Virus record (IMG/VR): IMGVR_UViG_3300009703_004110
Location: 268,271 to 332,270 of that record
Direction: 5' to 3' (one strand)
Length of the DNA: 64,000 nucleotides
Shown: piece by piece, positions 770-53,501 of the stretch
Layout: every line of letters begins with the position of its first letter
Position numbering within the stretch: the stretch's first letter is position 1
Translations under genes and position numbers: made by a program
The notes under the pieces: model-generated
Told to the model about the DNA's origin: nothing
Seen by the model: only the letters and a program-made list of their open reading frames with translations
Database searches by the model: none

Positions 770-3454
770 TTACCCATCCAAAGTTGAAAGACAACGCTTG
801 CATGTTCCATCCGAAAGATCAGAGTATCTCCAGCACTTGTCACACTTCTCACCTTGATGCCTGCCTACCTTTACTGAGAACTCATGCGAAGCTCCGCCCC
901 AAACATTGATACCCGAAACAATAAAAGCTTCTGTTAAATCTACATGCTTGGAATAAACAGCTTTTTCGATTTCGCAAGGAGGATCGTTAACCGGAAGGTA
1001 TAGTGTTACATCCGCCTCTAGAGACTTATTAAGAACTCCATTAGCTCGTGCCTTTTCAACTTCTTTATTAACAACTTCTCTCATTTCAAAGATTGCATTC
1101 CACCTTGGCACAAGTGCCGCATCAAGGTGAGTATCTTCAGCCTCAGCCCATCCCGCCTGGAACACAGAGTCCCCAAGAAACATCGAACCAAACGTATCCA
1201 TTTCTGCCCAAACTTCTTCAGATAGATACGAACATACTGGCGCGATCATTCTAACCATATCCTGTAGGTAATAACAAAATACAGTCTGGACAGATCTACG
1301 CGCTACACTATCTGATCTTTCGACATACAACCTGTCTTTTGTGATATCCAGATAGAAGGCAGATAGTTTTTGGCGAATAAAATCCATAAGATCACGGTAT
1401 GCACCATAGAAGTCATATTCGTCATAAGCCTGGTTAAAGCGTACTTTCAACTCTTCCAACTCATGAAGCATATATCTATCAACTTCATGCATATCTTCTA
1501 ATGCAACGGAATCTGTTTCGAAATTGAAATCGGATAAGTTACCAAGAAAGAACCTGAATGTATTACGAAGTCTTCTATAATTTTCATTAACCTGATTTAG
1601 AATTTCATCAGAGATTCTTACGTCAGTTTTGTAATCTACAGATACTGTCCATAATCTAAGTACGTCTTTATTGTACCTGCTAACAACATCGTCTGGAGAG
1701 ACCACATTCCCAAGAGACTTACTCATCTTACGACCCTTACCATCAACAACAAATCCATGAGTTACAACGGCCTTGTATGGAAGCTCACTATCGCTTGCTA
1801 CCGCAGTTAGTAAGGAGGTTTGGAACCAGCCACGATATTGATCGTGACCTTCTAGATATAAGTCTGCATTTGATTTGCCAACTGCTCGGTGTGATACACC
1901 AGAGTCGAACCAAACGTCCATGATATCCGTCTCTTTTTTGAGTGAATCTACAAGTGGGTTACCACGTAGATCATACTCTAAACCAAGGGATAATCTTTCT
2001 CCAAGTAATTCTCTTGGTGACCAAGTAAACCATACCTCTGTGCCATACTCTTCAAATACTTCGAGCAATCGCGCAAAGATTCTTTGATTATAAAGAGGCT
2101 GACCATCGTGATAAAAGACAGGGATTGGTACGCCCCAAGCTCTTTGTCGAGAGATACACCAGTCCGGTCTACCAAGAATCATCCCGATCATCTTATCTCT
2201 GCCATGGGGCGGATAAAATTCAACTTCTTTAAGCGAAGCCAATGCCATCACTTCTAAAGTATCTTCTACCTTAACAAACCACTGATTGGTAACTCGAAAA
2301 ACGATTGGCTTCTTCGTTCTCCAATCATGTGGATATGAGTGAGTAAAGTCTTCTTCATAGAGGACCGCATTTAGAGACGCACGCACGCGCTTGTCTGCCT
2401 TCATATAGAAGTCGCCAGCATATACTCCGGCGAGATCATTATAGTGACCTCTTTCATCTAAGATGCAATCACTTCCTAATCCGTGTTCTTGTCCGATCCA
2501 ATAGTCATCTTCACCGTGTCCGGGAGCGATATGAACCAATCCGGTCCCCATTGAGTCGGTAACATGATGCCCAACTACAACAGGACATAGTTCGTTAGAG
2601 AATGGATGATAGTATTCTAAGCCTTCAAAGTCAGTAAATGGCTTTGTACGATAAGAATCTATTTCAAGCTTATCTACAAACTCTGTATAAAGGGCCCTCG
2701 CCAATACGTAACTTCTTCCATCATCCAATGTAAGCAATACGTATGGAACGTCTTTGCCATAAGCAACCGCTCTATTGGCCGGAAGAGTCCATGGTGTTGT
2801 AGTCCAGATTACCAGCTTAACTCTTGCAGTAGTTTCCAACTCGACATAAACCGCCTTAGCGGTCACGTCCTTATATTCAAGCTCTGCTTCAGCTAATGCC
2901 GTTTCAGAAGATGGCGACCAATAAACAGGACGCTTACCTCTGTAAACATATCCGTTACGAAACATTTCATTAAAAACTCTAAGCTGCTCTCGCTTATATT
3001 CTTCATCTAATGTTTCGTATCTATGATCCCAATCAGCATGGATACCTAAGCTTTGAAACTGACGCTCTTGTTCGTCAACCCACTTACGAGCATACTTCCG
3101 GCAAGCAGCACGGACACTACTTCCGCTACTATCTGTGGCCTCTTCCGATGCCTTTAGTTCGATTGGAAGTCCGTGAGTATCCCACCCAGGAACAAACGGT
3201 GCATTATAACCCTGCATTCTCTTTCGCTTTAAGATTGCGTCCTTAAGAACCTTATTTAAAGCGTGGCCGATATGGATATTTCCATTGGCATATGGAGGGC
3301 CGTCATGTAGGATAAATGACTCCCCGTCTTTGTTTAATGAGAGATCATAAACTTCTTGTTCGCCCCATAACTCTTCGGTATCAGAAAAGCTCTGATCGCT
3401 TGGACGCATCCCAAAGTCTGTCTTAGGAAGATTTAGTTTGTGCTTCTTTGACAT
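770..3454 (-). CDS. ileS: isoleucine--tRNA ligase
   Basis: LHDGPPYANG-HIGH, GWDTHGLPIE, WTTTPWTLP editing motif, KMSKS, C-terminal CxxC..CxxC; 894 aa. Confidence 0.97.
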   Translation of the reverse strand: MSKKHKLNLPKTDFGMRPSDQSFSDTEELWGEQEVYDLSLNKDGESFILHDGPPYANGNIHIGHALNKVLKDAILKRKRMQGYNAPFVPGWDTHGLPIELKASEEATDSSGSSVRAACRKYARKWVDEQERQFQSLGIHADWDHRYETLDEEYKREQLRVFNEMFRNGYVYRGKRPVYWSPSSETALAEAELEYKDVTAKAVYVELETTARVKLVIWTTTPWTLPANRAVAYGKDVPYVLLTLDDGRSYVLARALYTEFVDKLEIDSYRTKPFTDFEGLEYYHPFSNELCPVVVGHHVTDSMGTGLVHIAPGHGEDDYWIGQEHGLGSDCILDERGHYNDLAGVYAGDFYMKADKRVRASLNAVLYEEDFTHSYPHDWRTKKPIVFRVTNQWFVKVEDTLEVMALASLKEVEFYPPHGRDKMIGMILGRPDWCISRQRAWGVPIPVFYHDGQPLYNQRIFARLLEVFEEYGTEVWFTWSPRELLGERLSLGLEYDLRGNPLVDSLKKETDIMDVWFDSGVSHRAVGKSNADLYLEGHDQYRGWFQTSLLTAVASDSELPYKAVVTHGFVVDGKGRKMSKSLGNVVSPDDVVSRYNKDVLRLWTVSVDYKTDVRISDEILNQVNENYRRLRNTFRFFLGNLSDFNFETDSVALEDMHEVDRYMLHELEELKVRFNQAYDEYDFYGAYRDLMDFIRQKLSAFYLDITKDRLYVERSDSVARRSVQTVFCYYLQDMVRMIAPVCSYLSEEVWAEMDTFGSMFLGDSVFQAGWAEAEDTHLDAALVPRWNAIFEMREVVNKEVEKARANGVLNKSLEADVTLYLPVNDPPCEIEKAVYSKHVDLTEAFIVSGINVWGGASHEFSVKVGRHQGEKCDKCWRYSDLSDGTCKRCLSTLDG

Positions 3455-4210: not shown

Positions 4211-4285
4211 TGGAGCGGATAACTGGATTCGAACCAGCGACATTTACGTTGGCAACGTAATGCTCTACCACTGAGCTATATCCGC
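4211..4285 (-). tRNA. tRNA-Gly(GCC)
   Basis: cloverleaf, TTACG-TTGCCAA-CGTAA, CCA end. Confidence 0.95.
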
Positions 4286-4571
4286 AAATGGGCCAGTCCT
4301 CATTTCTTTTTAAGTCTGACTCACCGCCTTCTTAAAATACCAGATTAGCAGTATTCTAAGCAATTTGTTCTGGCCGCAACCCAGAACACCGCCTTTAGTA
4401 ATAATTTGTCCACTCCTGATCAAATTGGTGGGACACCGCCTTTTAAATTACAATACATATGTGAGGAAGATGTATCATGCGATTGGTTCATCGACAACGC
4501 TTTTTTAGCTGGCCTTGAACACACCGTCTATAAAAATATTAGCTTATCACATGACACACCTTCCTGTTTTA

Positions 4572-5750
4572 TTACTCTACAATACTGGTAACGTAACCGG
4601 CGCCGACAGTCTTGCCTCCCTCACGAATGGCAAAACGCATCTGCTCTTCCATACCAACAGGCTTCTGTAGACGGAAAGTAATATCCGCACGATCACCTGG
4701 GTTTACGATACCCACCTCTCCTACATCAATAGTACCAGTTACATCAGTAGTTCCGAAGAAAAACTGAGGACTGTAACCAGTTCCGAATGGACGGTGACGG
4801 CCGCCCTCGTCCTTAGTAAGAACAAGAACGTGAGCAGTTGCCTCAATGTGAGGAACAATAGCACCAGGAGCAGTAATTACCTGACCTCTCTGGACGCCAT
4901 CACGCTTCACACCACGAAGTAATAGACCAACGTTCATACCAGCTACTGCTGCATCAACATCCTTGTGGAAAGCCTGAGTACCAGTTACCACAGTGTCTTC
5001 GCCTTCGCTGTCAAGACCAACGATCTCAACCTTATCACCAACCCGTAGGGTTCCTCTTTCTACCTTGCCAGTAACTACGGTTCCACGACCCTTGATGTTA
5101 AATACATCTTCAATAGGCATCATGAAAGGAGAGTCATAGTCACGAGTAGGCTCAGGAATAGCATCCAAAGCTGTTACCAACTCTGTAATACAATTCAAAG
5201 CCTCGGCCTCGGCGTCTCCGGCGAGTGCGGCATTAAGAGCTTGTAGAGCGCTACCAAAGATAAAGGCCACATTGGTGTAACCATTGGACTCCAGTTGCTC
5301 TTCCACTTCCATCTCAACTAACTCAAGTAACTCAGGATCAGCTACGTCACACTTGTTAACGAAAACAACCATGTGCTCAACGCCGACCTGACGAGCCAAT
5401 AGAATGTGCTCAACGGTCTGCTTCTGTGGTCCTTGAGAACCATCGACAAGCAAGATTGCTCCATCCATCTGAGACGCGCCAGTAATCATGTTCTTGATAT
5501 AGTCAGCGTGACCCGGACAGTCAATGTGTGCATAGTGACGAGTGTCACTCTCGTATTCTACGTGAGAGGTATTAATGGTAATACCACGCTCCCTCTCTTC
5601 TTTGGCATTGTCAATCTCATCAAAAGACTTAGCCTTGCTTCCCTGCAATACTGCCTGTACCTGAGTAATAGCAGCAGTTAGAGTAGTCTTACCATGATCA
5701 ACGTGGCCGATGGTTCCTACATTTATATGGCACTTAGATTCTGTACTCAT
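4572..5750 (-). CDS. tuf: elongation factor Tu
   Basis: [25 protein letters not shown]; start reassigned to ATG 5750 (RBS, ATGA overlap with upstream HNH). Confidence 0.97.
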
Positions 5751-6316
5751 TTTATTTTCCCTCTTTCTATTGTTGTATATGAAATAATTTTTTTCATATG
5801 TTGAATCCACTCATCAAATGAATGAGAGCGCTTCATATAGTTGCAAGTTTTGCAACATATTTTAATATTGCTTAATACATACCCAACATCATTATTGGGT
5901 CTGTCAAGCCCTATTGTATCTATTTTTGAACCACAATATTCGCATGGTTTTTGCCACAAAGATTTAAACTCAATAAAAGATATACCAAATTTATATCCAC
6001 GTCTTTCAGCTTCGTTTTTATAAATAGTGTATTTACTGACCGGCGAATATCTGTGCCTATCTTTGCACGGTTTACAGTTGGGGTGATACCCATCCTTTCT
6101 GCTTGCTAATTTGTGATATTCAGCAATCGGTTTTTTAACATTACAATGCCCACAAACTTTTTCTGTTATAGCGGGCTTTGCCTTTGTTTTCATTTCTGAT
6201 TGAATTTTCTTTACGCAGTCCTTACATCTGGCCATCACACCCAATCGGCAAGTCTTGTTTTTATAAAACTCTGAAAGCTCTTTCACCTTACTACACTTAG
6301 TACATGTTTTCGTCAT
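5747..6316 (-). CDS. HNH-type homing endonuclease
   Basis: repeated CxxC..K...EFY modules, CEYCG..GLDRPNN..GY..SN...CCKTCN; AT-rich. Confidence 0.85.
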
Positions 6317-6358
6317 AATATATTCTCCTATAACGATTGTACCAAATAACTTTAGGAA

Positions 6359-6628
6359 CTATTGATTAATTTTAATCCCAAAATCTTGATCATTCTCTGA
6401 GGCTTTTAAGATCTCTATGAATGCATCAATATCTTCTTTACTAGGTGTATAGTCATCGCTACCAATATTTACAACAGTCACAGAAGATAAGTCCATAAGT
6501 GCGGCTAGTAAAATTTTTTCTCTAAGTGGGACACCATTACCATCTGTGTACGGTGAAGCTCTAGACCAGATGCGATCACCTGTCGCATCAAGCCTTCTGC
6601 TGATTTCACATACATTCCGGTCTAACAC
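6359..6628 (-). CDS. hypothetical protein
   Basis: 89-aa ORF in gene-dense orientation. Confidence 0.5.
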   Translation of the reverse strand: MLDRNVCEISRRLDATGDRIWSRASPYTDGNGVPLREKILLAALMDLSSVTVVNIGSDDYTPSKEDIDAFIEILKASENDQDFGIKINQ

Positions 6629-6872
6629 GTCAGAATATATTAGATATAGAATTGTTAGTGACGACTATTCGTGCAGGCATATCATTGACCTGCCCTTCCC
6701 AGATAACTTTCGGATATTCGCTCATTATCTCTCCATATAAATAATCCTAACATAGCTTTTTAAGACTACATCAGGACATTGAATCAAGACCTCTCCATTA
6801 CTAGATAGACAACGCTAACCAACTCAGCGCAAAAGAGTGTAAGTCTATAGTGGGTATTTCTACCGTCTTGAA

Positions 6873-6984
6873 TGAAGTCACCAAAGGGACTCGAACCCTC
6901 GATCTCAAACGGGGGAGGTCCACCCATCGATCGCGCCCAACCAATAGCCCCTTCCTCTCAGGACTAAAGACACCTGCTGATGAC
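6873..6984 (-). ncRNA. tRNA-like RNA with a non-canonical expanded core
   Basis: acceptor GTCATCA/TGGTGAC, T arm GAGGG-TTCGAGT-CCCTT, 3' TTCA; no canonical anticodon arm. Confidence 0.55.
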
Positions 6985-6992
6985 ATAAAAAT

Positions 6993-7119
6993 AGGGTGCG
7001 TTTTGTTGTAACGGTGTCCTACCATTAGACGATCACCCCATAAGATGGTGGGGCGAGTGGGATTCGAACCACACATTACCGGCTTTTCATGCTTAACTTT
7101 GGATTGCTGTTTACACCCT
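6993..7119 (-). ncRNA. circularly permuted tRNA-like RNA (YrlA/Y RNA-like architecture)
   Basis: order is T arm, 3' acceptor strand+ACCA, TCTTA loop, 5' acceptor strand, D arm; ends paired AGGGTGT/GCACCCT. Confidence 0.75.
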
Positions 7120-7121
7120 TA

Positions 7122-7197
7122 TGGCGGACTGTGGGGGTTACGATCCCCGTACTTCAGCGTGACAGGCCGATGTGTTACCAATTACACCACACAGTCC
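7122..7197 (-). tRNA. tRNA-Asp(GTC)
   Basis: TCGGC-CTGTCAC-GCTGA, GCCA end; variant T loop ATCGTAA. Confidence 0.9.
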
Positions 7198-7414
7198 ATA
7201 TTATCTTGCGCCTATTAATTTTTCAATACAGGCTTCTAACTCTTCTTCTTTCATCTTTTTAATGCCATGTTGTGTTCCTTGGGAGTATCTCCCAAGCGAC
7301 GATCCCATTTGCAATGAGCCATATCACAACCATGATAACAAAAGCTATCAGAGCATGGTCCCATCCACTTATCTCGTTCTTCTGAGACTATCTTATATTG
7401 TTCAGATGGGAACT

Positions 7415-7780
7415 TCATATGTTCTCCTTAATTTGAAATAATGCATTTATCCATTCCGGTGTAATACCCCTAGAGAATACTACCCATCCTATGACATTAT
7501 CTTCATCAATTAAAGCTCTCGCTTCTTCCATTGATTTACCAGTTGTTAAAACATCATCAACTATTAAAAAAGGCAACTTTGAATTTTCAGGTATAACATG
7601 AGCCTTTGCTAATGGTGTACCACCAGTTGGTACCCCATATACGCCTCTAAAGTTTTGATACTCGGAAATCATATATGCCAAAGTTTTCCAATCTTCATCA
7701 GTTAGGGCATCACACTCTATCTTCCAGCCAGCTAAACGTCCGGCATATGTAGTAAACTTTTTTCTTTCAAAGAGCGGCAT
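7415..7780 (-). CDS. type I phosphoribosyltransferase-like protein
   Basis: PRPP-binding motif LIVDDVLTTGKS, GVPTGG. Confidence 0.8.
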   Translation of the reverse strand: MPLFERKKFTTYAGRLAGWKIECDALTDEDWKTLAYMISEYQNFRGVYGVPTGGTPLAKAHVIPENSKLPFLIVDDVLTTGKSMEEARALIDEDNVIGWVVFSRGITPEWINALFQIKENI

Positions 7781-8078
7781 TTAGTCTTTCTCTCCAACCA
7801 ACTACAAATTCTTCTCCGTATGTATCACGAATAATAAACTCCAATTTATTGATTGTTCGATCAAGCTTCCAATTATGCTTAGTAGCATTTTTCAGAAAAT
7901 GAATCCAGTCTGGCATCATACCGTGTTCTTTTAGGGACCATACAATTGTTTCGAGATCAATCCCTTTCTCGCTTACAAATCTAAATGCGCCTCTTACAAT
8001 CTTTATACCGTCGTCAGTTTCGCCCACAATTTCAAAATGAGGCTTTGTCTTTTTCTTTCTACCCATGACGACCCCCAA
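7767..8078 (-). CDS. hypothetical protein, weak resemblance to the AlaRS helical motif
   Basis: GAFRFVSEKGIDLE..PDW..F resembles AFKLYDTYGFP..VD..GF. Confidence 0.5.
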   Translation of the reverse strand: MGVVMGRKKKTKPHFEIVGETDDGIKIVRGAFRFVSEKGIDLETIVWSLKEHGMMPDWIHFLKNATKHNWKLDRTINKLEFIIRDTYGEEFVVGWRERLNAAL

Positions 8079-8260
8079 GGATCGTACTTTGGATAGAGGT
8101 TAGGCTGCTTCCCGCTGTGTCATAACTTCTCCCTATCTAAAATTTTAGTCGCCAAAAACTCCCGGGCTTCTGTCGTGGCGGTCGATGCTGGGTCTCTCAC
8201 CCATCCAATTGAATCCCTTAATTTACCCCGGTAATGAGCACCTGCTTTCGCAGACTAAAA

Positions 8261-8335
8261 TGGTAGCCGATGACGGATTCGAACCGCCGACCTTCGCTTT
8301 GTAAAAGCGACACTCTCCCGCTGAGTTAATCGGCC
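8261..8335 (-). tRNA. tRNA-Val(TAC)
   Basis: TCGCT-TTTACAA-AGCGA, ACCA end. Confidence 0.93.
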
Positions 8336-8384
8336 AGATACCATGATTTCTATTTCTACTAATAATACCAAAAGAAAGCAATTT

Positions 8385-45888: not shown

Positions 45889-45964
45889 TGGTAGAGTACC
45901 TTGGATTCGAACCAAGAACGCCGACGTCACAGGACGGAATGATAACCAATTTCAACAATACTCC
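45889..45964 (-). tRNA. tRNA-His(GTG) with A73 and no encoded G-1
   Basis: CCGTC-CTGTGAC-GTCGG; GGAGTAT/GTACTCT-A-CCA; base -1 is T. Confidence 0.85.
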
Positions 45965-45967
45965 AAA

Positions 45968-46231
45968 TTATTGTATAAATAAATCTAAATTAAATAATAG
46001 AAAATCTTTAGCACAATTATTTATAATATCTTCATCTAATAGCCTCTCTAGGTTCATTTTAGTAGTATGACCCGTTAAAGTAAAAATTTCTCCCGGGAAT
46101 TGGCTATCTAATGTAAATGAAAACTTTGGCGATAGTTGGAAAATTACAACTAATATATGATCACGATCTTTAAAAATATAAATATTTTCATCTAGTGATG
46201 ATATAATACACAAAAATTTTTCAAAAGTCAT
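45968..46231 (-). CDS. hypothetical protein, C-terminal LDLF-module family
   Basis: ends LLFNLDLFIQ. Confidence 0.55.
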   Translation of the reverse strand: MTFEKFLCIISSLDENIYIFKDRDHILVVIFQLSPKFSFTLDSQFPGEIFTLTGHTTKMNLERLLDEDIINNCAKDFLLFNLDLFIQ

Positions 46232-46236
46232 ATTGT

Positions 46237-46683
46237 CTATACAAACAAATCCATGTTAAACATTATAAAGTCTTTGATAGACTCTGGACCAGAAATCATA
46301 ATCTCTTCTGTGGTTAATATTTGTGAAGTATCAACTATAGATTTATTGACACCAACTAGATAGGGCCATTCATCTGAATCTTGCCTTGCTCTTTCTAGTT
46401 CACGAAGCTGCTGATATTCCGGTACGTTGCCAAGCCTGTCAAAATTATACTTAATCCAAATGGGATTATCCTCCTTAAAGTGTCCAACTAAAACAAGATT
46501 TGTATGATTTACACCAAGGTAAAAATTGTGCGGCAGATTATGTCTATGCTTTCCATAAATCTTTATCCAGTCGAGCCCACTTGAGTAAGTTCTTCTATGA
46601 CTTATAGTCGATGGAATTAAGTTTGTAAACATACCGCTGTCTTTAGCAGTATGATACAACTCACTTATTCTATCTGGATTCAT
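46237..46683 (-). CDS. hypothetical protein, C-terminal LDLF-module family
   Basis: ends IMFNMDLFV; ATGA overlap with the upstream gene. Confidence 0.6.
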   Translation of the reverse strand: MNPDRISELYHTAKDSGMFTNLIPSTISHRRTYSSGLDWIKIYGKHRHNLPHNFYLGVNHTNLVLVGHFKEDNPIWIKYNFDRLGNVPEYQQLRELERARQDSDEWPYLVGVNKSIVDTSQILTTEEIMISGPESIKDFIMFNMDLFV

Positions 46684-47273
46684 TTCTTCCTTGCAATCAT
46701 TAGCCTTTCTAGACCTAAGGCCCATCCTGCGCCACCATCATAAGGGCCGCCCCCAAGGATCTGCTTCTTGGTTTTAACAGAAGAAATCTCAAAGGTCTTT
46801 CCTGAGTCATCATATAGATTCAAACCCCTCTTCGCTCCATCTTCTAGAGACCAAGCGTTAGAAGGCAGAACCTTTCTGAATAGCTTAATGGCATCACGCC
46901 TCGTATCTCTACGAGCGTCAAGCGCATTATCCATCAGAAGTTCTACTCCAATCTGTGTGAACTCTCTTAGTCGTTCTGCATCAGTAGTCGACTCATTTCT
47001 AAAGCATCGAGCAACATAGTAAACTTTGCTCGCTCCAAGCTTTTGAGCGCCCATTCCTCTGACATAGTTGGTGACCTCTGGAGTCAACACAACACCATTA
47101 CCTAAGTCAAACATTCTGTTCTCAGTTCCCTCTGTACAGGAAGCGAAAACTTCTTCTTTGGCCAGGATTGGGATTTCAATATAACGGTAACCCCATGCTT
47201 CCAGCCAGGCTGAAATCTCAGCGATGAAGTAACCTCCGGTCAAGACTCTCATTAGCAGAGTAGGCCCTGACAC
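46680..47273 (-). CDS. minimal HisRS-like class II synthetase catalytic core
   Basis: GY..IEIP, L.PEVT, CFRNE..RLREFTQIGVE, GGG.YD, GWALGLERL then stop; 197 aa. Confidence 0.8.
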   Translation of the reverse strand: MSGPTLLMRVLTGGYFIAEISAWLEAWGYRYIEIPILAKEEVFASCTEGTENRMFDLGNGVVLTPEVTNYVRGMGAQKLGASKVYYVARCFRNESTTDAERLREFTQIGVELLMDNALDARRDTRRDAIKLFRKVLPSNAWSLEDGAKRGLNLYDDSGKTFEISSVKTKKQILGGGPYDGGAGWALGLERLMIARKK

Positions 47274-47290
47274 CTTGCGGCGTAATTAAC

Positions 47291-47938
47291 TTAGACATTT
47301 TTCTTTCCCTCTGTTGTTTTAGCCATTTTGGCCTCGACTATCATTTGAATTAATTCAATCTGACCTTTCAGAGCGTGCTTAATATTCTCATAAGCCAACT
47401 CTTGGTCTGGAAAACGATTCCTTGCCGCTTTAAGCATCGGCAAGATATGCTGCTTGCATTCTTCCATATAAGCCACCTGCTTCTCGCAAGAGAAGACTCC
47501 TGGCATCGTTTGGAAGTTGTGTACTCTGTCGCATCCCTTTACTATAGATGCAATTGGATTGGACGCCATATCTTTGTAATACTGTGTTTGATCCTTCTTG
47601 TCACCGCGATACTTCTTCGTCAAAAGCAAGACACCATCTGCAACTTGCTCACCAAACATAACACGAATAGTTTCAATTGGTACTTCATAGTCTTCAACTA
47701 CATCATGCAAGAGGCAAACAATGAATGTCGCCTCTTCATCACGCAAACCAGTCAAGGTTCGTGCATAATGCGTAATTGATATCTGGTGATGAAACTCAGG
47801 AGTTACCTTATCTTTTCTCAGTCCGTTGTGATATTCCGATGCAAACTCAAGCGCCTCAACAGCCTTGAAGTATCCCTTTCCCAAAAGAAAGGCTCTAATT
47901 CGTTCGCGATGAATGATGAACTTAGAAACAGATGTCAC
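47291..47938 (-). CDS. HD-domain (p)ppGpp hydrolase-like protein
   Basis: H.G.RKD..TP..H, LLHDVVED, K..DRVHN; GTG start after GGAGG. Confidence 0.85.
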   Translation of the reverse strand: MTSVSKFIIHRERIRAFLLGKGYFKAVEALEFASEYHNGLRKDKVTPEFHHQISITHYARTLTGLRDEEATFIVCLLHDVVEDYEVPIETIRVMFGEQVADGVLLLTKKYRGDKKDQTQYYKDMASNPIASIVKGCDRVHNFQTMPGVFSCEKQVAYMEECKQHILPMLKAARNRFPDQELAYENIKHALKGQIELIQMIVEAKMAKTTEGKKNV

Positions 47939-47964
47939 GACGCCTCCGTTAGTTATTTTAAATA

Positions 47965-48047
47965 TGGAGCGGGTGACGAGAATCGAACTCGCCATGTTTA
48001 AAACGCCTGCTTGGAAGGCAGGTTCCCCACCTTGGGGACTCACCCGC
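47965..48047 (-). tRNA. tRNA-Gly(TCC) with an enlarged variable region
   Basis: CCTGC-CTTCCAA-GCAGG, U73, 13-nt variable region. Confidence 0.85.
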
Positions 48048-48083
48048 ATATTATTCTTTATACTACTGACGCAGTATTTTAAC

Positions 48084-48524
48084 TCATTTTTTATTTTCGC
48101 CTAATGCGTAGATTGCCTCCATCGCATCTTCGTCCTTGGTTGCCTCAAACAAATCTTCCATTGAAGAAAACTTGACACCATGAAGATAGTATTCCTGAGA
48201 ATACCTATCTTCAACAGCAGGTCCATCAATTCTGTGAAGGCGGTCTTCTTCATCAAGATGAACAGCCACTCTCTGTCCATATTTTTCTTGGAAAGAAATC
48301 TTACTATCAGATTCCTCTGCAAAGTATAAGCCGTCAGTATTAATTGCGACCAACATACGATCTGAAAAGCAACGGACTAACGCCATTAGTCCGTCTGTAG
48401 TTTCTTGCAATAAAATAATTCTTCCGAAAGTAGGTTCTGACCGCGCAGCTATTCCGGGCTCCGCTCTCTTATTCTTATGGAACCAGACAGCTTTGTTCAG
48501 CAAATTTTCAACGCCATATATCAT
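48084..48524 (-). CDS. hypothetical protein with an LHRxDGPA motif
   Basis: LHRIDGPAV; paralog of 48521-48943. Confidence 0.65.
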   Translation of the reverse strand: MIYGVENLLNKAVWFHKNKRAEPGIAARSEPTFGRIILLQETTDGLMALVRCFSDRMLVAINTDGLYFAEESDSKISFQEKYGQRVAVHLDEEDRLHRIDGPAVEDRYSQEYYLHGVKFSSMEDLFEATKDEDAMEAIYALGENKK

Positions 48525-48943
48525 TTGACACCCAATTCGTAAATTGCATCCATTTCTTCGCCAGCTTCTTTTGCGGCATCAAACACAGCTTCTGCCGATC
48601 TGCATTGAACTCCTCGATAAAAATACTTATTTCCACCGTAATGCTTATGAGATATAAAGGCCGGCCCACCGAGTCTATGATAACGATCATTAGAATCTAT
48701 ATAAGCTTCAATCAACGGATTTTCACTATTCGTTAAGTGTCCATTATTTTCGCAACCTATATAAATTTTGCCTGCTATCGTATATGAATCAAGTTCACCA
48801 TTGTCAAATGACTGAACAATAATATTGGCCGGTCCCGCTAAACTATTTACACTTAGAATTCTTCCATATTTTGGAACAGTTCTAGTCTTATCATTAGGAT
48901 CTTTACCGTAGAAGAAAACGACTCTTCCTACTAAGACATTCAT
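48521..48943 (-). CDS. hypothetical protein with an HRxGGPA motif
   Basis: YHRLGGPAF; shared FGRI/YGRI and AIYxLG. Confidence 0.65.
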   Translation of the reverse strand: MNVLVGRVVFFYGKDPNDKTRTVPKYGRILSVNSLAGPANIIVQSFDNGELDSYTIAGKIYIGCENNGHLTNSENPLIEAYIDSNDRYHRLGGPAFISHKHYGGNKYFYRGVQCRSAEAVFDAAKEAGEEMDAIYELGVK

Positions 48944-49389
48944 GCCGTTACCTGCAAGATATCAAGATAGAACAAAATACTTTCCTTGTCTTTATTACCA
49001 AAAGCGATATCAATCACATGGTATCGGTCTGTCAGTCGAATGGAGTATTGATCGCCCTTTAGAAATAACATTAGAGTTGCCAAATATTACTCGGCTGCCG
49101 TCTCTACTCGGTCTTAATATAACATTAGAAGTTCCAACCCAAAAATCAAGGGACTTTTGCAAATGATTGTCAAAGAGTCAATCTCTACAAGCCTCTCCGC
49201 AAATCTGATATAATCACCCGGGCTATAGCTATTTACTGAACCACTAATCACTTCGGCATGTGTTCCACCAATCTGTGGGTGAATCTTACACTTACCTCTA
49301 CTGCACGGGTTCTTTGGCTTGCTATAGAAAAACTTTCGTAATATACTTCCTATAAGATCCATCGACCTTCCGTGCGGCTATATGTTAAA

Positions 49390-49466
49390 TGGCTGGGGTA
49401 GTAGGGTTCGAACCTACAAACCTTCCGGTTCAAAGCCGGATGCTCCACCAGTTGAGCTATACCCCA
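49390..49466 (-). tRNA. tRNA-Gln(TTG)
   Basis: T1-A72, TCCGG-CTTTGAA-CCGGA, GCCA end. Confidence 0.93.
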
Positions 49467-49748
49467 TTAAGTTAGAAGATCCATTTCATAAATTAAGAAG
49501 CTTCTAATAGAATCAGGAATTGTATCCCAGATATCTGCCGCCCGCCCCTGGCATATTAAGCGACCTGCCATATCTCTAATTCCCAATCTAATCTGACTTG
49601 TAGTTGCCAGTATACGAATATGATAGTTGTCAAATATAAACTCTGATCTATTCTCAGATTCATAATGCAATTCACAATGCTCTTCCAGTCGTACAGTTAA
49701 TATTTCTTTCTTGACTTTGGACTCTACTGCTTCTGACCAAGTATCCAT
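49467..49748 (-). CDS. hypothetical protein, C-terminal LDLF-module family
   Basis: ends LIYEMDLLT. Confidence 0.55.
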   Translation of the reverse strand: MDTWSEAVESKVKKEILTVRLEEHCELHYESENRSEFIFDNYHIRILATTSQIRLGIRDMAGRLICQGRAADIWDTIPDSIRSFLIYEMDLLT

Positions 49749-49769
49749 TATTAACTCGCAACATAAGAA

Positions 49770-49845
49770 TGGTGAGGCTGGTGAGATTCGAACTCACACT
49801 GGATGGCTTCTAAGACCATTTTCTCTACCGTTGGAATACAGCCCC
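49770..49845 (-). tRNA. tRNA-Leu(TAG), short variable loop
   Basis: ATGGT-CTTAGAA-GCCAT, ACCA end. Confidence 0.9.
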
Positions 49846-49878
49846 AAATGTTGAATAGATGTAGTTACCTATTCAAAC

Positions 49879-49908
49879 ATTACTACTGAACTTTTCTTTT
49901 TAACTCAA
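49879..49908 (-). promoter_or_regulatory. putative phage promoter, class A motif
   Basis: TTGAGT-TAAAAAGAAAAGTTCAGT-AGTAAT upstream of tRNA-Leu. Confidence 0.6.
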
Positions 49909-49921
49909 GTTTTAATTTAAC

Positions 49922-50125
49922 TTACTGAGTTGCTAAGAAGGCTTCGCGTGCTCCGTGTCTTTCTCCTGTCTTTTCATCAACAGATATTTGGCGCCTTGCT
50001 TCAATGTATCTTTCACGCATTTCTTTAACTAGAGGGTTGTCGATTCCGTGCCTTTCATACAGATCTTTAAACATTTTTGCTAGCACTAAACTCTTTTGAT
50101 GATAGAAGGTGTCTTTGTTTTCCAT
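49922..50125 (-). CDS. hypothetical protein
   Basis: 67 aa, RBS GAGGA. Confidence 0.5.
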   Translation of the reverse strand: MENKDTFYHQKSLVLAKMFKDLYERHGIDNPLVKEMRERYIEARRQISVDEKTGERHGAREAFLATQ

Positions 50126-50179
50126 TTATCTTCCTCTCTTACGCTCATCTTATTTGCCACCCTACCACCCTTTTGTTGT

Positions 50180-51181
50180 TTAGCCTTTCCAACCTGGAGG
50201 TGCTTTTGACGCCACCTTGTTTCCAGGGAATGGATTAGGCTTATTGACAGGCTTAGAGATAACGCCCCACTTTACCAGTTTAGCTCGTGTTGCATATCTA
50301 AAGCTTGTCAAACGATTTGGCTCAGAAGATTCTCTGGTGAATGATACCGAAGTAACTTTCATTGAGGTTTCCTTGCCATAGCCTGTTCCTATGTTTGTTT
50401 CGGGAGTAGCTTCAGAAGAAACATGATTAACATTTACAGTGCCTTTAGTTATTCTTCGACTAGAACTTCTGGTCGTAGTAGATGAGCTAAAGGTTCCGCC
50501 CATTGACTGCGATCCTGATCCGTAAACTATGTTTCCGCCAAGATTGTCATAAAAATTGTCCATAGGCCAAGAAGCATCCTTCAGCCAGTACTTGTAATCC
50601 TGTTTCTCGTTAAAGACCGCTACTCCAATTACGCCAACATTATCGGTGCCCTTACCCATCTTTGCTGAGTAGGACTCACCAGTCTTTGTAAACTCAAATG
50701 AAGCAACATCATCACTTGTTCTGCGCCATCCCTTAATATCTATTATACCGTATCCGCCGAGAATATACCCGCGCTTTTCGAAGGAGGCTTCCTCTCCGTC
50801 CATCACCGAAAGCCCGTCAACCGAGACTACAATTTCTTTTCTTTGATAGTCATTATTACGAACTCGGATTATATACTCTCCACTCTCTGGTGCCTCAAAG
50901 TACACCATTCCATCATGTGCGTGCTTGGTCATATTGCTACCAGCACTGATAATTTCTACTTCAACCATTTTCTTCTCCGTATTGATCTCTGGCTTTATTT
51001 GGTAGCCTAAAGATATCATATGATTTTTGATAACGGTATCCATAACACGAGATGTTTTTTCTTCGGTATAATACTTTTTAAGGGCCTCTACTGCCTCCAT
51101 CGCCGGTGGCGTTAATGTCACAGTTAGAAGTTTATTTTTTCTTTCACTTGCCACAGGCGCTCCCTCCATTGAGTATAACAC
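50180..51181 (-). CDS. hypothetical protein with putative N-terminal ribbon-helix-helix and a beta-rich domain
   Basis: LTVTLTP..helix..helix; VSVDGLSVMDG, GWR, NVGVIGVAVF; true start may be GTG 51154. Confidence 0.65.
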   Translation of the reverse strand: MLYSMEGAPVASERKNKLLTVTLTPPAMEAVEALKKYYTEEKTSRVMDTVIKNHMISLGYQIKPEINTEKKMVEVEIISAGSNMTKHAHDGMVYFEAPESGEYIIRVRNNDYQRKEIVVSVDGLSVMDGEEASFEKRGYILGGYGIIDIKGWRRTSDDVASFEFTKTGESYSAKMGKGTDNVGVIGVAVFNEKQDYKYWLKDASWPMDNFYDNLGGNIVYGSGSQSMGGTFSSSTTTRSSSRRITKGTVNVNHVSSEATPETNIGTGYGKETSMKVTSVSFTRESSEPNRLTSFRYATRAKLVKWGVISKPVNKPNPFPGNKVASKAPPGWKG

Positions 51182-51228
51182 AGTTATCTATATCAATGTT
51201 ATACTCAAAAGTATAACCATGATCAAAA

Positions 51229-51432
51229 CTAATCTGAAATTATTTTAAATCTATCACCATCGCTAGGGAGCATGGCCAAAGCGGAACCGTTATCCCACTT
51301 GACATAAACCTGCATACCCATATCAAAAGGCATCATTGCATGACCTGTAATTATTCCGGTATCACCTGGCTTTAAATTTGTATAAGGATCTTTAGTGTAA
51401 ACCAACTTGATACGAGTACCTTCTTTATACAT
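51229..51432 (-). CDS. DUF4314-like small protein
   Basis: GTRIKL...DPY..L.PG..G, V.WDNGS.L. Confidence 0.75.
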   Translation of the reverse strand: MYKEGTRIKLVYTKDPYTNLKPGDTGIITGHAMMPFDMGMQVYVKWDNGSALAMLPSDGDRFKIISD

Positions 51433-53501
51433 CAGCCTCTCCTGTTTGCTATAATATCTTCTGCAACGCTACGCGGAACCTCTGCGTAATGAGATAGCTC
51501 CATAGTATGAGTACCACGGCCGCTAGTCTTAGAACGAAGCTCTGTGGTGTAACTAAAGGTTTCTGCTAGCGGGACCATAGCTGTAATGATTGATGTTCCA
51601 CCCTTATCCTCCATGCCCTGGATTTCTCCACGACGAGCATTAAGGGTTCCAATTACTGTACCAAGATAATCCTTTGGAACAATAACTTCAATCGCCATAA
51701 TCGGCTCAAGAAGAACAGGCTTGGCGTTTCGCATGGCCTCCTTAAAAGCCATAGCTCCGGCTTGAGAATACGTTCGCTCATTAGCATCAACACTATGAGT
51801 TGAGCCATCAATTAGCCTGACCAAAACATCAACTACTGGATAATCAGCAAGGACTCCAGAAGTAAATGCCTCTTCGATTCCCCTAAAGACTGGCTGGATA
51901 TATTCCTTGGGAATGGCACCACCAACAACTTTATTAATAAGCTCATGACCGCTACCTGCTTCACGAGGTTCAATCTCGATCACAGCATGACCATAAGAGC
52001 CCTTTCCACCGGTATGCCTCCAGAGCTTCTTATCAGCACTAGCAGCCGCACGAATAGTCTCTCGATAAGAAACCTGTGGGCGTCCAACACTAATCCCGAC
52101 ACCAAAATCGTCACGAAGTCGGGTAGTTAAAACTTCAAGGTGAAGCTCTCCCATGCCAGCCATAATAGTCTGTCCGGTCTCTCGATCAGTCCAAACTTTA
52201 AATGTTGGATCTTCATTGGTAAGCTTGGACAAAGCAAGTCCGAGCTTATCTTGATCAGAGTTCTTATTTGGTTCAACAGAAACTTGAATCACTGGCTCAG
52301 GAAAAGACATAGACTCAAGTAGAATTGGATTACCACGAAGAGATAAGGTGTCTCCTGTAGTAGCGTCCTTAAGACCTACAAGAGCGACAATATCTCCAGA
52401 ACGCATTTCAGTTCTATCTGCTCGTTCCTTTGCGTGCATTTCAAGAATACGAGAGATTCGCACCTTGCGACCCTTGGTGGCATTATAAGCATTACTGCCG
52501 GATGCCATAACTCCAGAGTAAACTCTCGCATAAGCAAGGGAACCAAAGAACTTATCCGTTACAATCTTAAAGACAAGTGCACTAAATGCCTCATCATCAT
52601 TCAGCTGCAAAACGATCTCTTCTTCTGAATCATCAATAGCTTTAATTTCGCCAATATCAGCAGGAGAAGGAAGGTATCGTACAATTGCATCAAGCAAAGG
52701 CTGAACGCCCTTATTCTTATATGCAGAGCCACATAGTACAAGTGTCGCTTCATTACTCAGAGTAATTTCACGAAGTCCTGCAACAAGATTCTCAACTGAA
52801 ATACTATCTGTTTCTGACCACTCCTTAAAGTAATCATCATTAAGCATAGCAACCGCTTCAAGAATCTCACAGTGCATATCATATGCGTCATCGTACATAT
52901 CAGAAGGAATATCCGAGTCGACCATTTCTAGCCCCATCTTGTCCTTCCAAGTAATTGCCTTCATTTCCACTAGATCAATTACTCCCTTGAAATCAGGGCC
53001 AGAACTAATCGGTAACTGTAGCGGTAAGACTGTAGCTCCAAGGCGTTCAATCATTGAGTCTACTGCACTTTGGAAGTCTGCACCAATCGCGTCCATCTTG
53101 TTGATGAAAGCAATTCGTGGAACGCCATAACGCTCTGCCTGACGCCATACGGTCTCTGACTGAGACTCGACACCACCCTTCGCACAAAAGACTGCCACAG
53201 AGCCATCTAGGACCCTTAGGGAGCGTTCTACTTCCACAGAGAAGTCAATGTGTCCCGGAGTATCAATGATGTTGATAGTGTGACTATCCCATTCGACAGT
53301 TGTAGCGGCAGAACTAATGGTAATGCCACGAGCCTGTTCCTGCTTTCCATCATCCATTGTAGTGTTACCATCATGGACCTCACCCATCATATGGTTCTTC
53401 CCGGTATAGAAAAGAATCCTTTCTGTGGTTGTAGTCTTGCCCGCATCAATGTGGGCCATGATCCCAATATTACGGGTGTGACTAATTCGTTCGGTACTCA
53501 T
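51432..53501 (-). CDS. fusA: elongation factor G
   Basis: [37 protein letters not shown]; 689 aa. Confidence 0.97.

What the first reader, a model, noticed from the sequence alone, without database searches (positions are those of the whole stretch)
770..53501. Exceptionally complete translation toolkit in a phage-like genome
Seen: EF-Tu, EF-G, IF3, an RF1-like factor, deformylase, two Pth2 proteins, five synthetases and about 18 tRNAs. They are scattered among orphan genes and not arranged in the cellular str or thrS-infC operons. Carrying both elongation GTPases is unusual for a phage. Inference: these replace host factors destroyed by defences that target translation.
Basis: partly seen in the sequence, partly recalled or inferred. 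Interest (0 to 1): 0.65.

Follow-up and report, generated by a model that had tools for sequence, protein, structure and literature searches.

The report
Huge phage carrying both elongation factors
The window is one arm of a roughly 420-kb bacteriophage from a subsurface metagenome that carries intact EF-Tu, EF-G, IF3, a short RF1, several tRNA synthetases and 19 tRNAs among RNA-repair and NAD-salvage genes, a known kind of huge-phage toolkit with an unusually full set of factors.

Summary
On the minus strand the window encodes full-length EF-Tu, EF-G, IF3, peptide deformylase, Pth2, IleRS and LysRS, all above NCBIfam cut-offs. It also holds a domain-1-less RF1, a compact ArgRS-fold protein, a HisRS-like fragment, a frameshifted GluRS-like gene, a second Pth2 domain and 19 tRNA loci. 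The contig is viral: terminase and portal are present, and there is no rRNA, EF-Ts, IF1, RRF or str/S10 ribosomal protein. An independent assembly closes the genome at about 420 kb, so the 'provirus' label looks like a trimming artefact. Translation genes in huge phages are already published (Al-Shayeb 2020). Three things go further. (1) EF-Tu and EF-G together were found in none of 61 other factor-bearing viral records, only in one relative. (2) The EF-Tu belongs to a distinct clade shared by huge phages and orphan bacterial paralogues, while the EF-G is canonical-like, so the kit is a mosaic. (3) An amber-suppressor tRNA and an in-frame TAG at codon 5 of a Pth2-HD gene are both conserved in the relative. 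Both factors are under purifying selection (dN/dS about 0.1). That they replace factors destroyed by defences is plausible from context but untested.

The parts
770..3454 (-). Isoleucyl-tRNA synthetase, full length (894 aa). The HIGH and KMSKS motifs and the C-terminal Cys cluster are present.
   Evidence: TIGR00392 809 bits against a cut-off of 621. Pfam tRNA-synt_1 plus Anticodon_1. Motifs read from the translation. 64% identical to the relative's IleRS, dN/dS 0.11.
4572..5810 (-). EF-Tu with three domains and G1-G5 motifs intact. The likely start is the ATG at 5750, giving 392 aa. It is a member of a divergent EF-Tu clade.
   Evidence: TIGR00485 544 against 522. Motifs. Tree: a 100* split from canonical EF-Tu. 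Clade signature includes Gln for the invariant canonical Glu at window residue 259 and Gly for the invariant Arg at 333. 85% identical to the relative, dN/dS 0.08.
10283..11189 (-). GluRS/GluQRS-like catalytic-core gene, interrupted by a frameshift near 10525.
   Evidence: Pfam tRNA-synt_1c. gltX 198 bits against a cut-off of 290. Residues 4-221 of the relative's 305-aa protein align in frame -3 and residues 221-301 in frame -1.
18011..18625 (-). Initiation factor IF3, with N and C domains.
   Evidence: Pfam IF3_N plus IF3_C. TIGR00168 163 against 60.
20917..21603 (-). Short RF1 (228 aa). It covers domains 2-4 only and keeps the PPT and GGQ motifs.
   Evidence: prfA 203 bits against a cut-off of 423, covering model positions 114-328 of 361. 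PDB RF1 residues 112-325 of 360 at E 1e-41, RF2 at 1e-31, PrfH at 2e-11. All 120 best homologues are 147-234 aa. GGQ is present in 110 of 110 aligned.
27437..28906 (-). Lysyl-tRNA synthetase (class II), full length.
   Evidence: TIGR00499 585 against 428. Pfam tRNA-synt_2 plus the OB fold.
29239..29808 (-). Peptide deformylase.
   Evidence: Pfam Pep_deformylase at 4e-42. TIGR00079 121 against 104. The EGCLS and HEIDH motifs are seen in the translation.
34253..34714 (-). Peptidyl-tRNA hydrolase Pth2.
   Evidence: PF01981 at 2e-30. TIGR00283 92 against 82.
35306..35381 (-). Amber-suppressor tRNA (anticodon CUA). ARAGORN labels it 'Pyl'.
   Evidence: ARAGORN. Rfam tRNA 56.9 bits. A homologue sits at the syntenic place in the relative, about 80% identical with compensatory stem changes.
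36389..37327 (-). Pth2-like plus HD-domain gene whose fifth codon is an in-frame TAG (37315-37313), preceded by a Shine-Dalgarno site and an ATG.
   Evidence: PF01981 42 bits by six-frame search. There is no ATG, GTG or TTG for 121 codons after the TAG, the most extreme such case in the genome. Sequence read. The same TAG after a four-codon leader is present in the relative, 74% identical over 310 aa.
41662..42846 (-). Compact ArgRS-fold protein (394 aa) with HIGH and KMSS motifs.
   Evidence: TIGR00456 65 bits against a cut-off of 262. It belongs to a family of 390-420-aa proteins. AlphaFold model with pLDDT 95. The top 20 Foldseek PDB hits are all ArgRS, E 1e-16 to 5e-13.
46680..47273 (-). 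HisRS/HisZ-like N-terminal catalytic fragment (197 aa), conserved as a short protein in the relative.
   Evidence: Pfam tRNA-synt_His at 9e-11. hisS 59 bits against a cut-off of 287. 71% identical to a 170-186-aa ORF of the relative.
51432..53501 (-). EF-G, with all five domains and intact GTPase motifs.
   Evidence: TIGR00484 973 against 659. Pfam domains. Motifs. Forms a clade with the relative on a long stem inside canonical, mostly Bacillota, EF-G. dN/dS 0.11.
4211..63181 (-). Nineteen tRNA loci scattered singly between genes: Gly-GCC, Asp, Val, Leu-UAA, Met, Phe, Pro, Gln-CUG, Ser-GCU, CUA suppressor, Cys, Ile x2, Ser-UGA, His, Gly-UCC, Gln-UUG, Leu-UAG and Thr. All have an encoded CCA end.
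   Evidence: ARAGORN. 15 pass the Rfam gathering score. The plus-strand 'tRNA-Arg' at 49373-49449 mirrors tRNA-Gln at 49390-49466.
38715..40544 (-). Thg1-like tRNA 5'-end enzyme, RNase H and an RNA ligase.
   Evidence: Pfam Thg1 at 3e-23, RNase_H at 2e-22, RNA_ligase at 3e-10.
53904..60332 (-). RNA-repair block directly upstream of EF-G in the direction of transcription (minus strand): RlaP nucleotidyltransferase, T4 Rnl1-like ligase, an AAA ATPase and an AAA_33 (PNK-like) kinase. A LAGLIDADG endonuclease lies on the other strand.
   Evidence: Pfam. The same order is kept in the relative.
25454..33611 (-). NAD and alarmone-related genes interleaved with LysRS and PDF: NADAR, a SpoT-type HD_4 hydrolase, NAMPT and a NadM-Nudix-like protein. 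Further NAD-related genes elsewhere in the window: NAD kinase at 44275-45096, a second HD_4 at 47291-48049 and Tad4 at 60437-61099.
   Evidence: Pfam. NCBIfam.

Best explanation
The window is the auxiliary arm of a huge phage of about 420 kb that uses the standard genetic code. The arm is a long-retained 'translation maintenance' island.

It encodes working copies of the two elongation GTPases, IF3, a short RF1, deformylase, Pth2, three complete synthetases (Ile and Lys in the window, Asn just outside it) and 25 tRNAs genome-wide. These genes are interleaved with tRNA/RNA-repair and NAD-salvage genes.

The most likely role is to act on the host ribosome so that elongation, initiation, termination and tRNA supply continue during a long infection in which the host's own supply has stopped or been damaged. 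Whether that damage comes from phage-imposed shut-off or from abortive-infection defences cannot be told here.

Shown:
- Gene identity and intact catalytic motifs.
- Viral context.
- Conservation and purifying selection against a diverged relative.
- Mosaic origin: the EF-Tu comes from a specialised clade shared by phages and bacterial orphan paralogues, and the EF-G comes from canonical EF-G.
- A conserved suppressor tRNA together with a conserved in-frame amber codon.

Inferred:
- That the proteins are expressed and work on host ribosomes.
- The reason the phage needs them.
For: Identity and intactness:
- NCBIfam scores are above cut-off for EF-Tu, EF-G, IF3, IleRS, LysRS, PDF, Pth2 and AsnRS.
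- The G1-G5 motifs of both GTPases, GGQ and PPT of RF1, and HIGH and KMSKS of IleRS are present.

Viral context:
- Terminase and portal are adjacent at G000 172-176 kb.
- Nearly all genes lie on one strand and GC is even.
- There is no 16S rRNA, EF-Ts, IF1, RRF or str/S10 ribosomal protein.
- An independent 420,521-bp assembly is 100% identical to the window end and also contains the record's start, which closes the genome at about 420,130 bp.

Retention and selection:
- A relative assembled in a different ENA/Logan sample (contigs of 160-403 kb) keeps the gene order across the window at 36-85% protein identity.
- EF-Tu is the best-conserved protein. dN/dS is 0.08 for EF-Tu, 0.11 for EF-G and 0.11 for IleRS, with dS above 1.3.

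Not a recent host capture:
- EF-Tu falls in a 69-row clade split with 100* support from 35 canonical str-operon EF-Tus.
- EF-G forms its own 100* clade on a long stem.

Context of repair and salvage genes.

Literature: huge phages carry such genes and are proposed to sustain translation (PMC7162821).
Against: - There is no expression evidence. Only DNA runs hold the sequence.
- The host is unknown. EF-Tu points to Pseudomonadota or Myxococcota, while EF-G points weakly to Bacillota.
- No EF-Ts is encoded, so the divergent EF-Tu would have to use the host's exchange factor or none.
- Parts of the kit look decayed or non-canonical: the frameshifted GluRS-like gene, the HisRS-like fragment, the compact ArgRS-like protein without a phage tRNA-Arg, and RF1 without domain 1.
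- The divergent EF-Tu has Gln in place of a Glu that is invariant in canonical EF-Tu at the tRNA 3'-end site. Its substrate range could therefore differ from ordinary EF-Tu.
Confidence: 0.55

Rival explanations
1. The factors are spare parts that replace host EF-Tu, tRNAs and other factors after abortive-infection defences have cleaved or modified them. They would act together with the neighbouring repair and anti-defence genes.
For: - The factors share the arm with Tad4, NADAR, NAMPT and NadM-Nudix, two SpoT-type HD hydrolases, three RNA ligases, Thg1, RlaP and a PNK-like kinase.
- EF-G sits directly downstream, in the direction of transcription, of a conserved repair block of a PNK-like kinase, an AAA ATPase, Rnl1 and RlaP.
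- EF-Tu is cleaved by Lit and by the type IV Thoeris caspase (PMC13581612; 10.1101/2024.10.24.620036).
- The only previously described distinct EF-Tu-like subfamily, actinomycete Tuf3, is a stress-expressed, inhibitor-resistant spare (PMC4342817).
- In a Teredinibacter genome a member of the same divergent EF-Tu clade lies beside an EF-G paralogue, between RtcB, NADAR, Apyc1, an ADP-ribosylglycohydrolase and NAD-salvage genes.
Against: - The phage EF-Tu keeps the RGITI Lit site and the Arg of the R59 caspase site. Only the R45 position is changed, to Lys, and that caspase is promiscuous.
- No defence that destroys EF-G or IF3 turned up in my literature searches.
- Other bacterial members of the EF-Tu clade sit in unrelated contexts.
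- Association is not a test.
Confidence: 0.3
2. A partly private decoding regime. The divergent EF-Tu, the phage's own EF-G, the short RF1, the amber-suppressor tRNA and unusual phage tRNAs would form a co-adapted set. That set would favour phage tRNAs and control programmed UAG read-through, rather than simply topping up host factors.
For: - The suppressor tRNA and the in-frame TAG at codon 5 of the Pth2-HD gene are both conserved in a relative whose synonymous sites are saturated.
- The clade-wide Glu-to-Gln change lies at the residue that, from memory of the ternary-complex structures, stacks on A76 of the aminoacyl-tRNA.
- Several phage tRNAs are atypical: 76-nt tRNA-Leu and 92-nt tRNA-Lys.
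- The short RF1 family keeps PPT and GGQ and is common on contigs of huge-phage size.
Against: - Only one clear read-through gene was found. TAG is not enriched among in-frame stops and still ends 13.5% of ORFs.
- Bacterial members of the EF-Tu clade occur without tRNA arrays.
- An RF1-type factor would oppose UAG suppression rather than help it.
- No binding or specificity data exist.
Confidence: 0.12
3. The translation genes are cellular DNA, either the host flank of a provirus or a chimeric assembly, and not phage genes.
For: - IMG/VR classes the record as 'provirus'.
- The genes have cellular homologues.
Against: - An independent assembly from another data set is 100% identical across the record's end and contains the record's start about 88 kb further on, which indicates a circular or permuted 420-kb genome.
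- The flanks beyond both ends of the record are orphan-rich and phage-like.
- Strand bias and GC content are the same as in the rest of the phage.
- Synteny is conserved in a second phage.
- EF-Tu is at most 60% identical to the canonical genomic EF-Tus retrieved, and EF-G at most 61% identical to any named bacterial EF-G.
- There is no rRNA and no ribosomal-protein operon.
Confidence: 0.02

Closest known systems
Huge phages of Al-Shayeb et al. 2020 (PMC7162821)
   Same: - Genome above 200 kb from an environmental metagenome.
- tRNAs, synthetases, IF3, EF-G or EF-Tu, RF1/RF2 and deformylase scattered among orphan genes.
- tRNA-repair ligases.
   Different: [quoted passage not shown]
- The four published EF-G-bearing genomes I tested lack EF-Tu. 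Their EF-Gs are 47-49% identical to this one and do not group with it.
- This phage and one relative carry EF-Tu, EF-G, IF3 and RF1 together.
- The terminase is only about 26% identical to any deposited phage.
actEF-Tu / Tuf3 of actinomycetes, the one distinct EF-Tu-like subfamily recognised by Atkinson 2015 (PMC4342817)
   Same: A second, clearly diverged EF-Tu kept beside the canonical factor. It has been proposed to be a condition-specific or inhibitor-resistant spare.
   Different: - The clade found here is carried by huge phages and by Pseudomonadota, Myxococcota and Alphaproteobacteria genomes, not by actinomycetes.
- I had no Tuf3 sequence to place in the tree, so the relationship is untested.
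Stop-codon-recoded phages and their 'code change module' (Borges et al., 10.1101/2021.08.26.457843)
   Same: A phage-encoded suppressor tRNA, a release factor and, in the relative, a GlnRS next to the tRNA(CUA), with in-frame stop codons that need the suppressor.
   Different: - The genome is standard-code: coding density is 0.94 under table 11, and one conserved in-frame TAG was found.
- In that study TAG-recoded phages carried RF2. Here the factor is RF1-type, which recognises UAG.
- The read-through gene is a Pth2-HD gene, not a lysis or structural gene.
PrfH-RtcB ribosome rescue and repair pair (PMC9304027)
   Same: A release-factor homologue without domain 1, encoded near RNA ligases.
   Different: - The phage factor matches RF1 far better than PrfH: PDB E 1e-41 against 2e-11, and prfH 82 bits against a cut-off of 167.
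- It keeps the RF1 PxT-type motif.
- No RtcB is encoded in the window.

Membership tests
Bacterial EF-Tu (TIGR00485) | Score above the curated cut-off, three domains and G1-G5 GTPase motifs. | tested here: met
   544 bits against 522. Pfam GTP_EFTU, D2 and D3. [22 protein letters not shown] and SAL are present.
Canonical (str-operon type) EF-Tu clade | Groups with the genomic tuf genes that lie next to fusA, and keeps the residues invariant in them. | tested here: not met
   Separated by a 100* branch (0.49 plus 0.18 substitutions per site) from 35 canonical sequences. Gln replaces the invariant Glu at window residue 259, and Gly replaces the invariant Arg at 333. There is no fusA or rps gene nearby.
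EF-G (TIGR00484) | Score above cut-off, five domains and GTPase motifs. | tested here: met
   973 bits against 659. Pfam GTP_EFTU, D2, III, IV and [15 protein letters not shown] and NKMD are present.
IF3 (TIGR00168) | N and C domains, with a score above cut-off. | tested here: met
   163 bits against 60.
Release factor 1 (TIGR00019) | Full four-domain protein above cut-off. | tested here: not met
   203 bits against 423. Only model positions 114-328 are covered and domain 1 is absent.
Release factor 1 (TIGR00019) | PxT codon-recognition motif and GGQ hydrolysis motif. | tested here: met
   PPT at residues 74-76 and GGQ at 119-121. Both are conserved across 110 short homologues.
PrfH | Score above the TIGR03072 cut-off. 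| tested here: not met
   82 bits against 167. The PDB PrfH match is only E 2e-11.
Aminoacyl-tRNA synthetases | Equivalog score above cut-off for a named specificity. | tested here: inconclusive
   Met for IleRS, LysRS and AsnRS (AsnRS lies outside the window). Not met for the GluRS-like, ArgRS-like and HisRS-like genes. The ArgRS-like protein has the ArgRS fold. Catalytic activity was not tested.
Huge (jumbo) tailed phage | Terminase large subunit and portal, genome above 200 kb, no cellular core operons. | tested here: met
   PHROG terminase at 1e-66 and portal at 4e-48. The record is 332 kb and closes at about 420 kb. There is no 16S rRNA and no str/S10 protein. A major capsid protein was not identified.
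Alternative-code (TAG-recoded) phage | Many genes need TAG read as a sense codon. | tested here: not met
   Table 11 already gives 0.94 coverage. TAG is not enriched among same-frame ORF junctions. One conserved in-frame TAG was found.
Alternative-code (TAG-recoded) phage | Phage-encoded suppressor tRNA(CUA). | tested here: met

The most novel reading that the evidence does not exclude
This huge-phage lineage runs a partly orthogonal elongation and termination module. The module would consist of an EF-Tu from a specialised clade with an altered tRNA 3'-end pocket, the phage's own EF-G, a domain-1-less RF1 and a conserved amber suppressor. Together they would gate expression of a Pth2-HD tRNA-rescue enzyme through a UAG at codon 5. 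On this reading the divergent EF-Tu clade, shared with orphan bacterial paralogues, is an undescribed class of conflict-associated translation factor.
Probability: 0.15. Interest if true: 0.85.

Novelty: new variant of a known kind. Interest (0 to 1): 0.6.

Why it matters
Translation genes in huge phages are known, but their purpose is still argued from gene lists. This lineage offers three concrete handles.

1. It is the only case among 62 factor-bearing viral genomes examined in which EF-Tu and EF-G can be studied together.
2. It carries an EF-Tu clade distinct from the canonical factor. Huge phages and bacterial orphan genes share this clade, and it differs at invariant tRNA-contact positions. 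That makes 'spare part', 'resistant part' and 'specialised part' separable in vitro.
3. It has a single, conserved, suppressor-dependent amber codon in a standard-code phage. This is a minimal natural example of the first step towards stop-codon recoding, or of a translational switch.

Tried and rejected
- Genome-wide recoding. ORF coverage under TAG, TGA or TAA reassignment gives no gain beyond chance, and TAG is not enriched at same-frame ORF junctions. Rejected, apart from the one gene.
- Cellular origin or provirus flank. Rejected.
- A single-protein EF-G scan of IMG/VR found nothing because its patterns were too specific. I repeated it with an alignment.
- Most 'phage' database hits for EF-Tu and EF-G are short or host-contaminated records, such as str-operon pieces, and say nothing about phages.
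- Resistance by target-site change. The Lit-site RGITI and the Arg at R59 are unchanged. So are the Asp of GHVDHGKT and the Thr of GGKTVGAG, which I recalled from memory as the TreTu and Doc target sites. Only R45 differs, as Lys. No support.
- The 'ribosomal protein L12' gene just outside the record contains only a C-terminal-domain-like stretch (33.5 bits against a cut-off of 84) and is not counted as a ribosomal protein.
- Host naming from cluster members returned no names.
- Atlas look-ups of the two large orphans beside the ThiF-like gene gave nothing usable.
- The PDB sequence search for the ArgRS-like protein was nearly blank. A fold search replaced it.
- The second start-less frame, an EndoVII-like homing endonuclease at 41080-41493, follows TGA-TAG with no upstream ATG in frame. 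I did not count it as read-through.

Full report
WHAT THE WINDOW IS. The window is the last 64 kb of a single-contig IMG/VR virus record of 332,270 bp with 39.7% GC. Almost every ORF of the record lies on the minus strand, and GC content and skew are even across the window. PHROG profiles identify an adjacent portal and terminase large subunit at 172-176 kb, along with ribonucleotide reductase, helicases, SbcC and two GroEL genes. The terminase is only about 26% identical to any deposited phage.

IMG/VR labels the record 'provirus', but this looks like a trimming artefact. A 420,521-bp contig from an independent ENA assembly is 100% identical to the last 11.8 kb of the record. The same contig also carries the gene at record positions 7694-10567. 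The two coordinate mappings differ by 420,130 bp, which fits a circular or circularly permuted genome of about 420 kb. The record lacks about 88 kb of that genome. The roughly 31 kb of the missing part that I could read is orphan-rich. It holds a flotillin-like gene, an ArdC-like gene and a gene with an L12 C-terminal-domain-like stretch below cut-off, and it has no cellular operons. The sequence comes from a subsurface metagenome.

CHECK OF THE OBSERVATION. Pfam and NCBIfam confirm these genes above their curated cut-offs: EF-Tu, EF-G, IF3, deformylase, Pth2, IleRS and LysRS. The translations show the G1-G5 motifs of both GTPases, the domain IV His loop of EF-G, HIGH and KMSKS of IleRS, and GGQ and PPT in the release factor.

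The release factor is a 228-aa form that aligns to residues 112-325 of E. coli RF1. It matches RF2 and PrfH much less well. All 120 best homologues are likewise 147-234 aa, many of them on contigs of 230-760 kb, and GGQ is invariant among them. It is therefore a conserved short RF1 family and not a broken gene.

Three of the five 'synthetases' are not ordinary:
- The GluRS-like gene is split by a frameshift, judged against the 305-aa protein of a relative.
- The HisRS-like ORF is a 197-aa fragment that is also short in the relative.
- The ArgRS-like protein is a compact 394-aa form. It belongs to a family of 390-420-aa proteins. Its high-confidence model (pLDDT 95) finds ArgRS structures as its top 20 matches.

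A complete AsnRS lies 1.8 kb outside the window. ARAGORN finds 19 distinct tRNA loci in the window and 25 in the record, all within the last 74 kb.

EF-Tu and EF-G are 46 kb apart. No S12, S7, S10, L3 or L4 homologue exists in the record, and neither does 16S rRNA, EF-Ts, IF1 or RRF. The stated refutation test therefore fails, and the genome is viral. The kit is rich but not complete.

HOW UNUSUAL IT IS. Al-Shayeb et al. (PMC7162821) already reported EF-G, EF-Tu, EF-Ts, IF1, IF3, RF1/2, RRF, deformylase, up to 15 synthetases and up to 67 tRNAs in huge phages. They noted that no phage has them all. I tested co-occurrence directly:
- Of 20 IMG/VR records with an EF-Tu like this one, 9 of them at least 90% complete, none has EF-G.
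- Of 37 IMG/VR records with a true EF-G, 6 of them at least 90% complete, none has EF-Tu.
- The four published huge phages with EF-G lack EF-Tu.
- Among 25 of the larger of these records, IF3 occurs in 7 and an RF-1 domain in 9. Two have EF-Tu, IF3 and a short RF, and one has EF-G, IF3 and a full RF. None has all four.

The only other genome with both GTPases is a relative assembled in a different ENA/Logan sample (contigs of 160-403 kb). Its EF-Tu is 85% identical and its EF-G 72% identical.

Caveats: pattern scans are capped, many records are fragments, and close kin of the window are withheld by the tools.

ORIGIN AND SELECTION. In a tree of 112 EF-Tu sequences, a branch with 100% SH-aLRT support separates two groups. 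One group holds the canonical EF-Tus: 35 genomic copies from many phyla, most with fusA directly upstream, plus 8 viral rows nested among them. The other group has 69 rows: the window's EF-Tu, its 14 close relatives, 17 EF-Tus from IMG/VR records, 11 of them 190-620 kb, and 37 copies from metagenomes and bacterial genomes. The bacterial copies come from Hahella, Teredinibacter, Pleionea, Thiodiazotropha, Aurantivibrio, Myxococcota and alphaproteobacterial MAGs.

The clade differs from canonical EF-Tu at eight near-invariant positions. These include Gln for the invariant Glu at window residue 259 and Gly for the invariant Arg at 333. From memory of the Thermus ternary-complex structures, that Glu stacks on A76 of the aminoacyl-tRNA. 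I could not check this with the tools.

In bacteria these genes are orphans outside the str operon. In Teredinibacter one lies beside an EF-G paralogue in an island with RtcB, NADAR, Apyc1, an ADP-ribosylglycohydrolase and NAD-salvage genes. In three other genomes the context is unrelated. A 2015 survey knew only one distinct EF-Tu-like subfamily, actinomycete Tuf3 (PMC4342817).

The EF-G is different. It scores as canonical EF-G and forms a 100%-supported clade with the relative, a 4-kb metagenome contig (P0003) and one further metagenome sequence. That clade sits on a long stem inside a mostly Bacillota group, with support below the star level. It is apart from the EF-Gs of the published huge phages and from the Teredinibacter paralogue, which is 42% identical. 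The kit is therefore a mosaic.

Gene order across the whole window is kept in the relative at 36-85% protein identity, and EF-Tu is the best conserved. dN/dS is 0.08 for EF-Tu, 0.11 for EF-G and 0.11 for IleRS, with synonymous sites saturated. This argues for long-term function.

THE AMBER SUPPRESSOR. The tRNA that ARAGORN labels 'Pyl' has the anticodon CUA. The genome as a whole uses the standard code.

One gene needs the suppressor. The second Pth2 domain lies in a 307-codon frame with no ATG, GTG or TTG for its first 121 codons, the most extreme such frame in the genome. Just upstream in the same frame the sequence reads GGAGAGGGAA ATG GAA CAC ACT TAG. The relative has the same layout: a Shine-Dalgarno site, a four-codon leader of different sequence, TAG, and then the conserved SLCPTDKLYIITRKD, with 74% identity over 310 residues. 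Synonymous differences within the conserved N-terminus show that it is translated.

The relative also has a tRNA(CUA) at the syntenic place. It is about 80% identical, with compensatory changes in three stems, and it lies next to a full GlnRS. The most economical reading is programmed UAG read-through at codon 5 of a Pth2-HD gene. The inserted amino acid is unknown. The RF1-type factor would compete with suppression, and I cannot explain that combination.

MECHANISM. Shown: gene identity, intact motifs, viral context, retention and purifying selection.

Inferred: the factors work on the host ribosome to keep translation going. The neighbouring genes are RNA ligases, a Thg1-like enzyme, RlaP, a PNK-like kinase, SpoT-type HD hydrolases, Pth2, NAMPT with NadM-Nudix, NADAR and Tad4. 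They suggest an arm devoted to repairing or replacing translation components and NAD.

EF-Tu-cleaving defences do exist. But the phage EF-Tu keeps the known cleavage sites apart from the R45 position, no EF-G- or IF3-destroying defence is known to me, and nothing here tests the idea. I therefore rank general maintenance of translation first, defence replacement as a specific and overlapping rival, and a private decoding module as the most novel reading still open.

VERDICT. The object is a new variant of a known kind, namely huge-phage translation gene sets. It has three features worth following up: both elongation GTPases together, a distinct EF-Tu clade shared by phages and bacteria, and a conserved suppressor-dependent amber codon.

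Noticed in passing
window 36389-37327 (-) and 35306-35381 (-); L161:8767-9709 and L161:12088-12165: The Pth2-HD gene has an in-frame TAG at codon 5 after a Shine-Dalgarno site and an ATG. Both the TAG and a tRNA(CUA) are conserved in a diverged relative, although the genome otherwise uses the standard code.
   Followed up: yes
G000 ends; ENA contig k141_1786444 (L061, L242, L244): The IMG/VR record, classed 'provirus' at 332 kb, lacks about 88 kb. An independent contig closes the genome at about 420,130 bp. The missing part includes a 151-aa protein with an L12 C-terminal-domain-like stretch (below cut-off), a flotillin-like gene and an ArdC-like gene.
   Followed up: partly
window 10283-11189 (-): The GluRS/GluQRS-like gene is split by a frameshift near 10525, in an A-rich KKLSK-coding stretch. 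This could be a real mutation, a slippage site or an assembly error. The relative has an intact 305-aa gene, and QueF lies at the window start.
   Followed up: partly
G000 262278-265065 (3-6 kb before the window): Isocitrate lyase and malate synthase lie side by side, so the phage encodes a glyoxylate shunt. Next to them are a sulfotransferase, an M50 peptidase and a third RNA ligase.
   Followed up: no
L065 (Teredinibacter sp. contig), 5818-9191: A bacterial island holds an EF-G paralogue and a divergent-clade EF-Tu side by side. They lie between RtcB, NADAR, a Mut7-C RNase and an AbiEii-RNA ligase on one side and Apyc1, Endo_dU, an ADP-ribosylglycohydrolase and a full NAD-salvage set on the other.
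   Followed up: partly
window 11706-11781, 49770-49845; G000 258801-258892: The tRNAs with Leu anticodons UAA and UAG are only 76 nt and have no long variable arm. A tRNA-Lys(CUU) is 92 nt. All tRNAs have an encoded CCA end.
   Followed up: no
window 22828-23514 (-), 45242-45883 (+), 57291-58082 (+), 63197-64000 (+), 41080-41493 (-): Homing endonuclease genes (HNH, LAGLIDADG, EndoVII-like) are interspersed among the translation and repair genes, several on the opposite strand. The EndoVII-like frame follows TGA-TAG and has no canonical start for 62 codons.
   Followed up: partly
window 11929-15597 (-): A ThiF/E1-like protein (243 aa) is flanked by two large orphans of 449 and 526 aa. Neither has a Pfam, PHROG-like or Atlas lead.
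   Followed up: partly
window 60437-61099, 30543-33611, 25454-25939, 44275-45096: Tad4 (a type I Thoeris inhibitor), NAMPT with a NadM-Nudix-like protein, NADAR and NAD kinase suggest a set for restoring NAD and countering defence. The relative additionally carries PARG-like, NadA, NAD synthase and ADP-ribosylglycohydrolase genes.
   Followed up: no
G000 187675-189345 and 237196-238797: The phage has two GroEL-type chaperonin genes.
   Followed up: no
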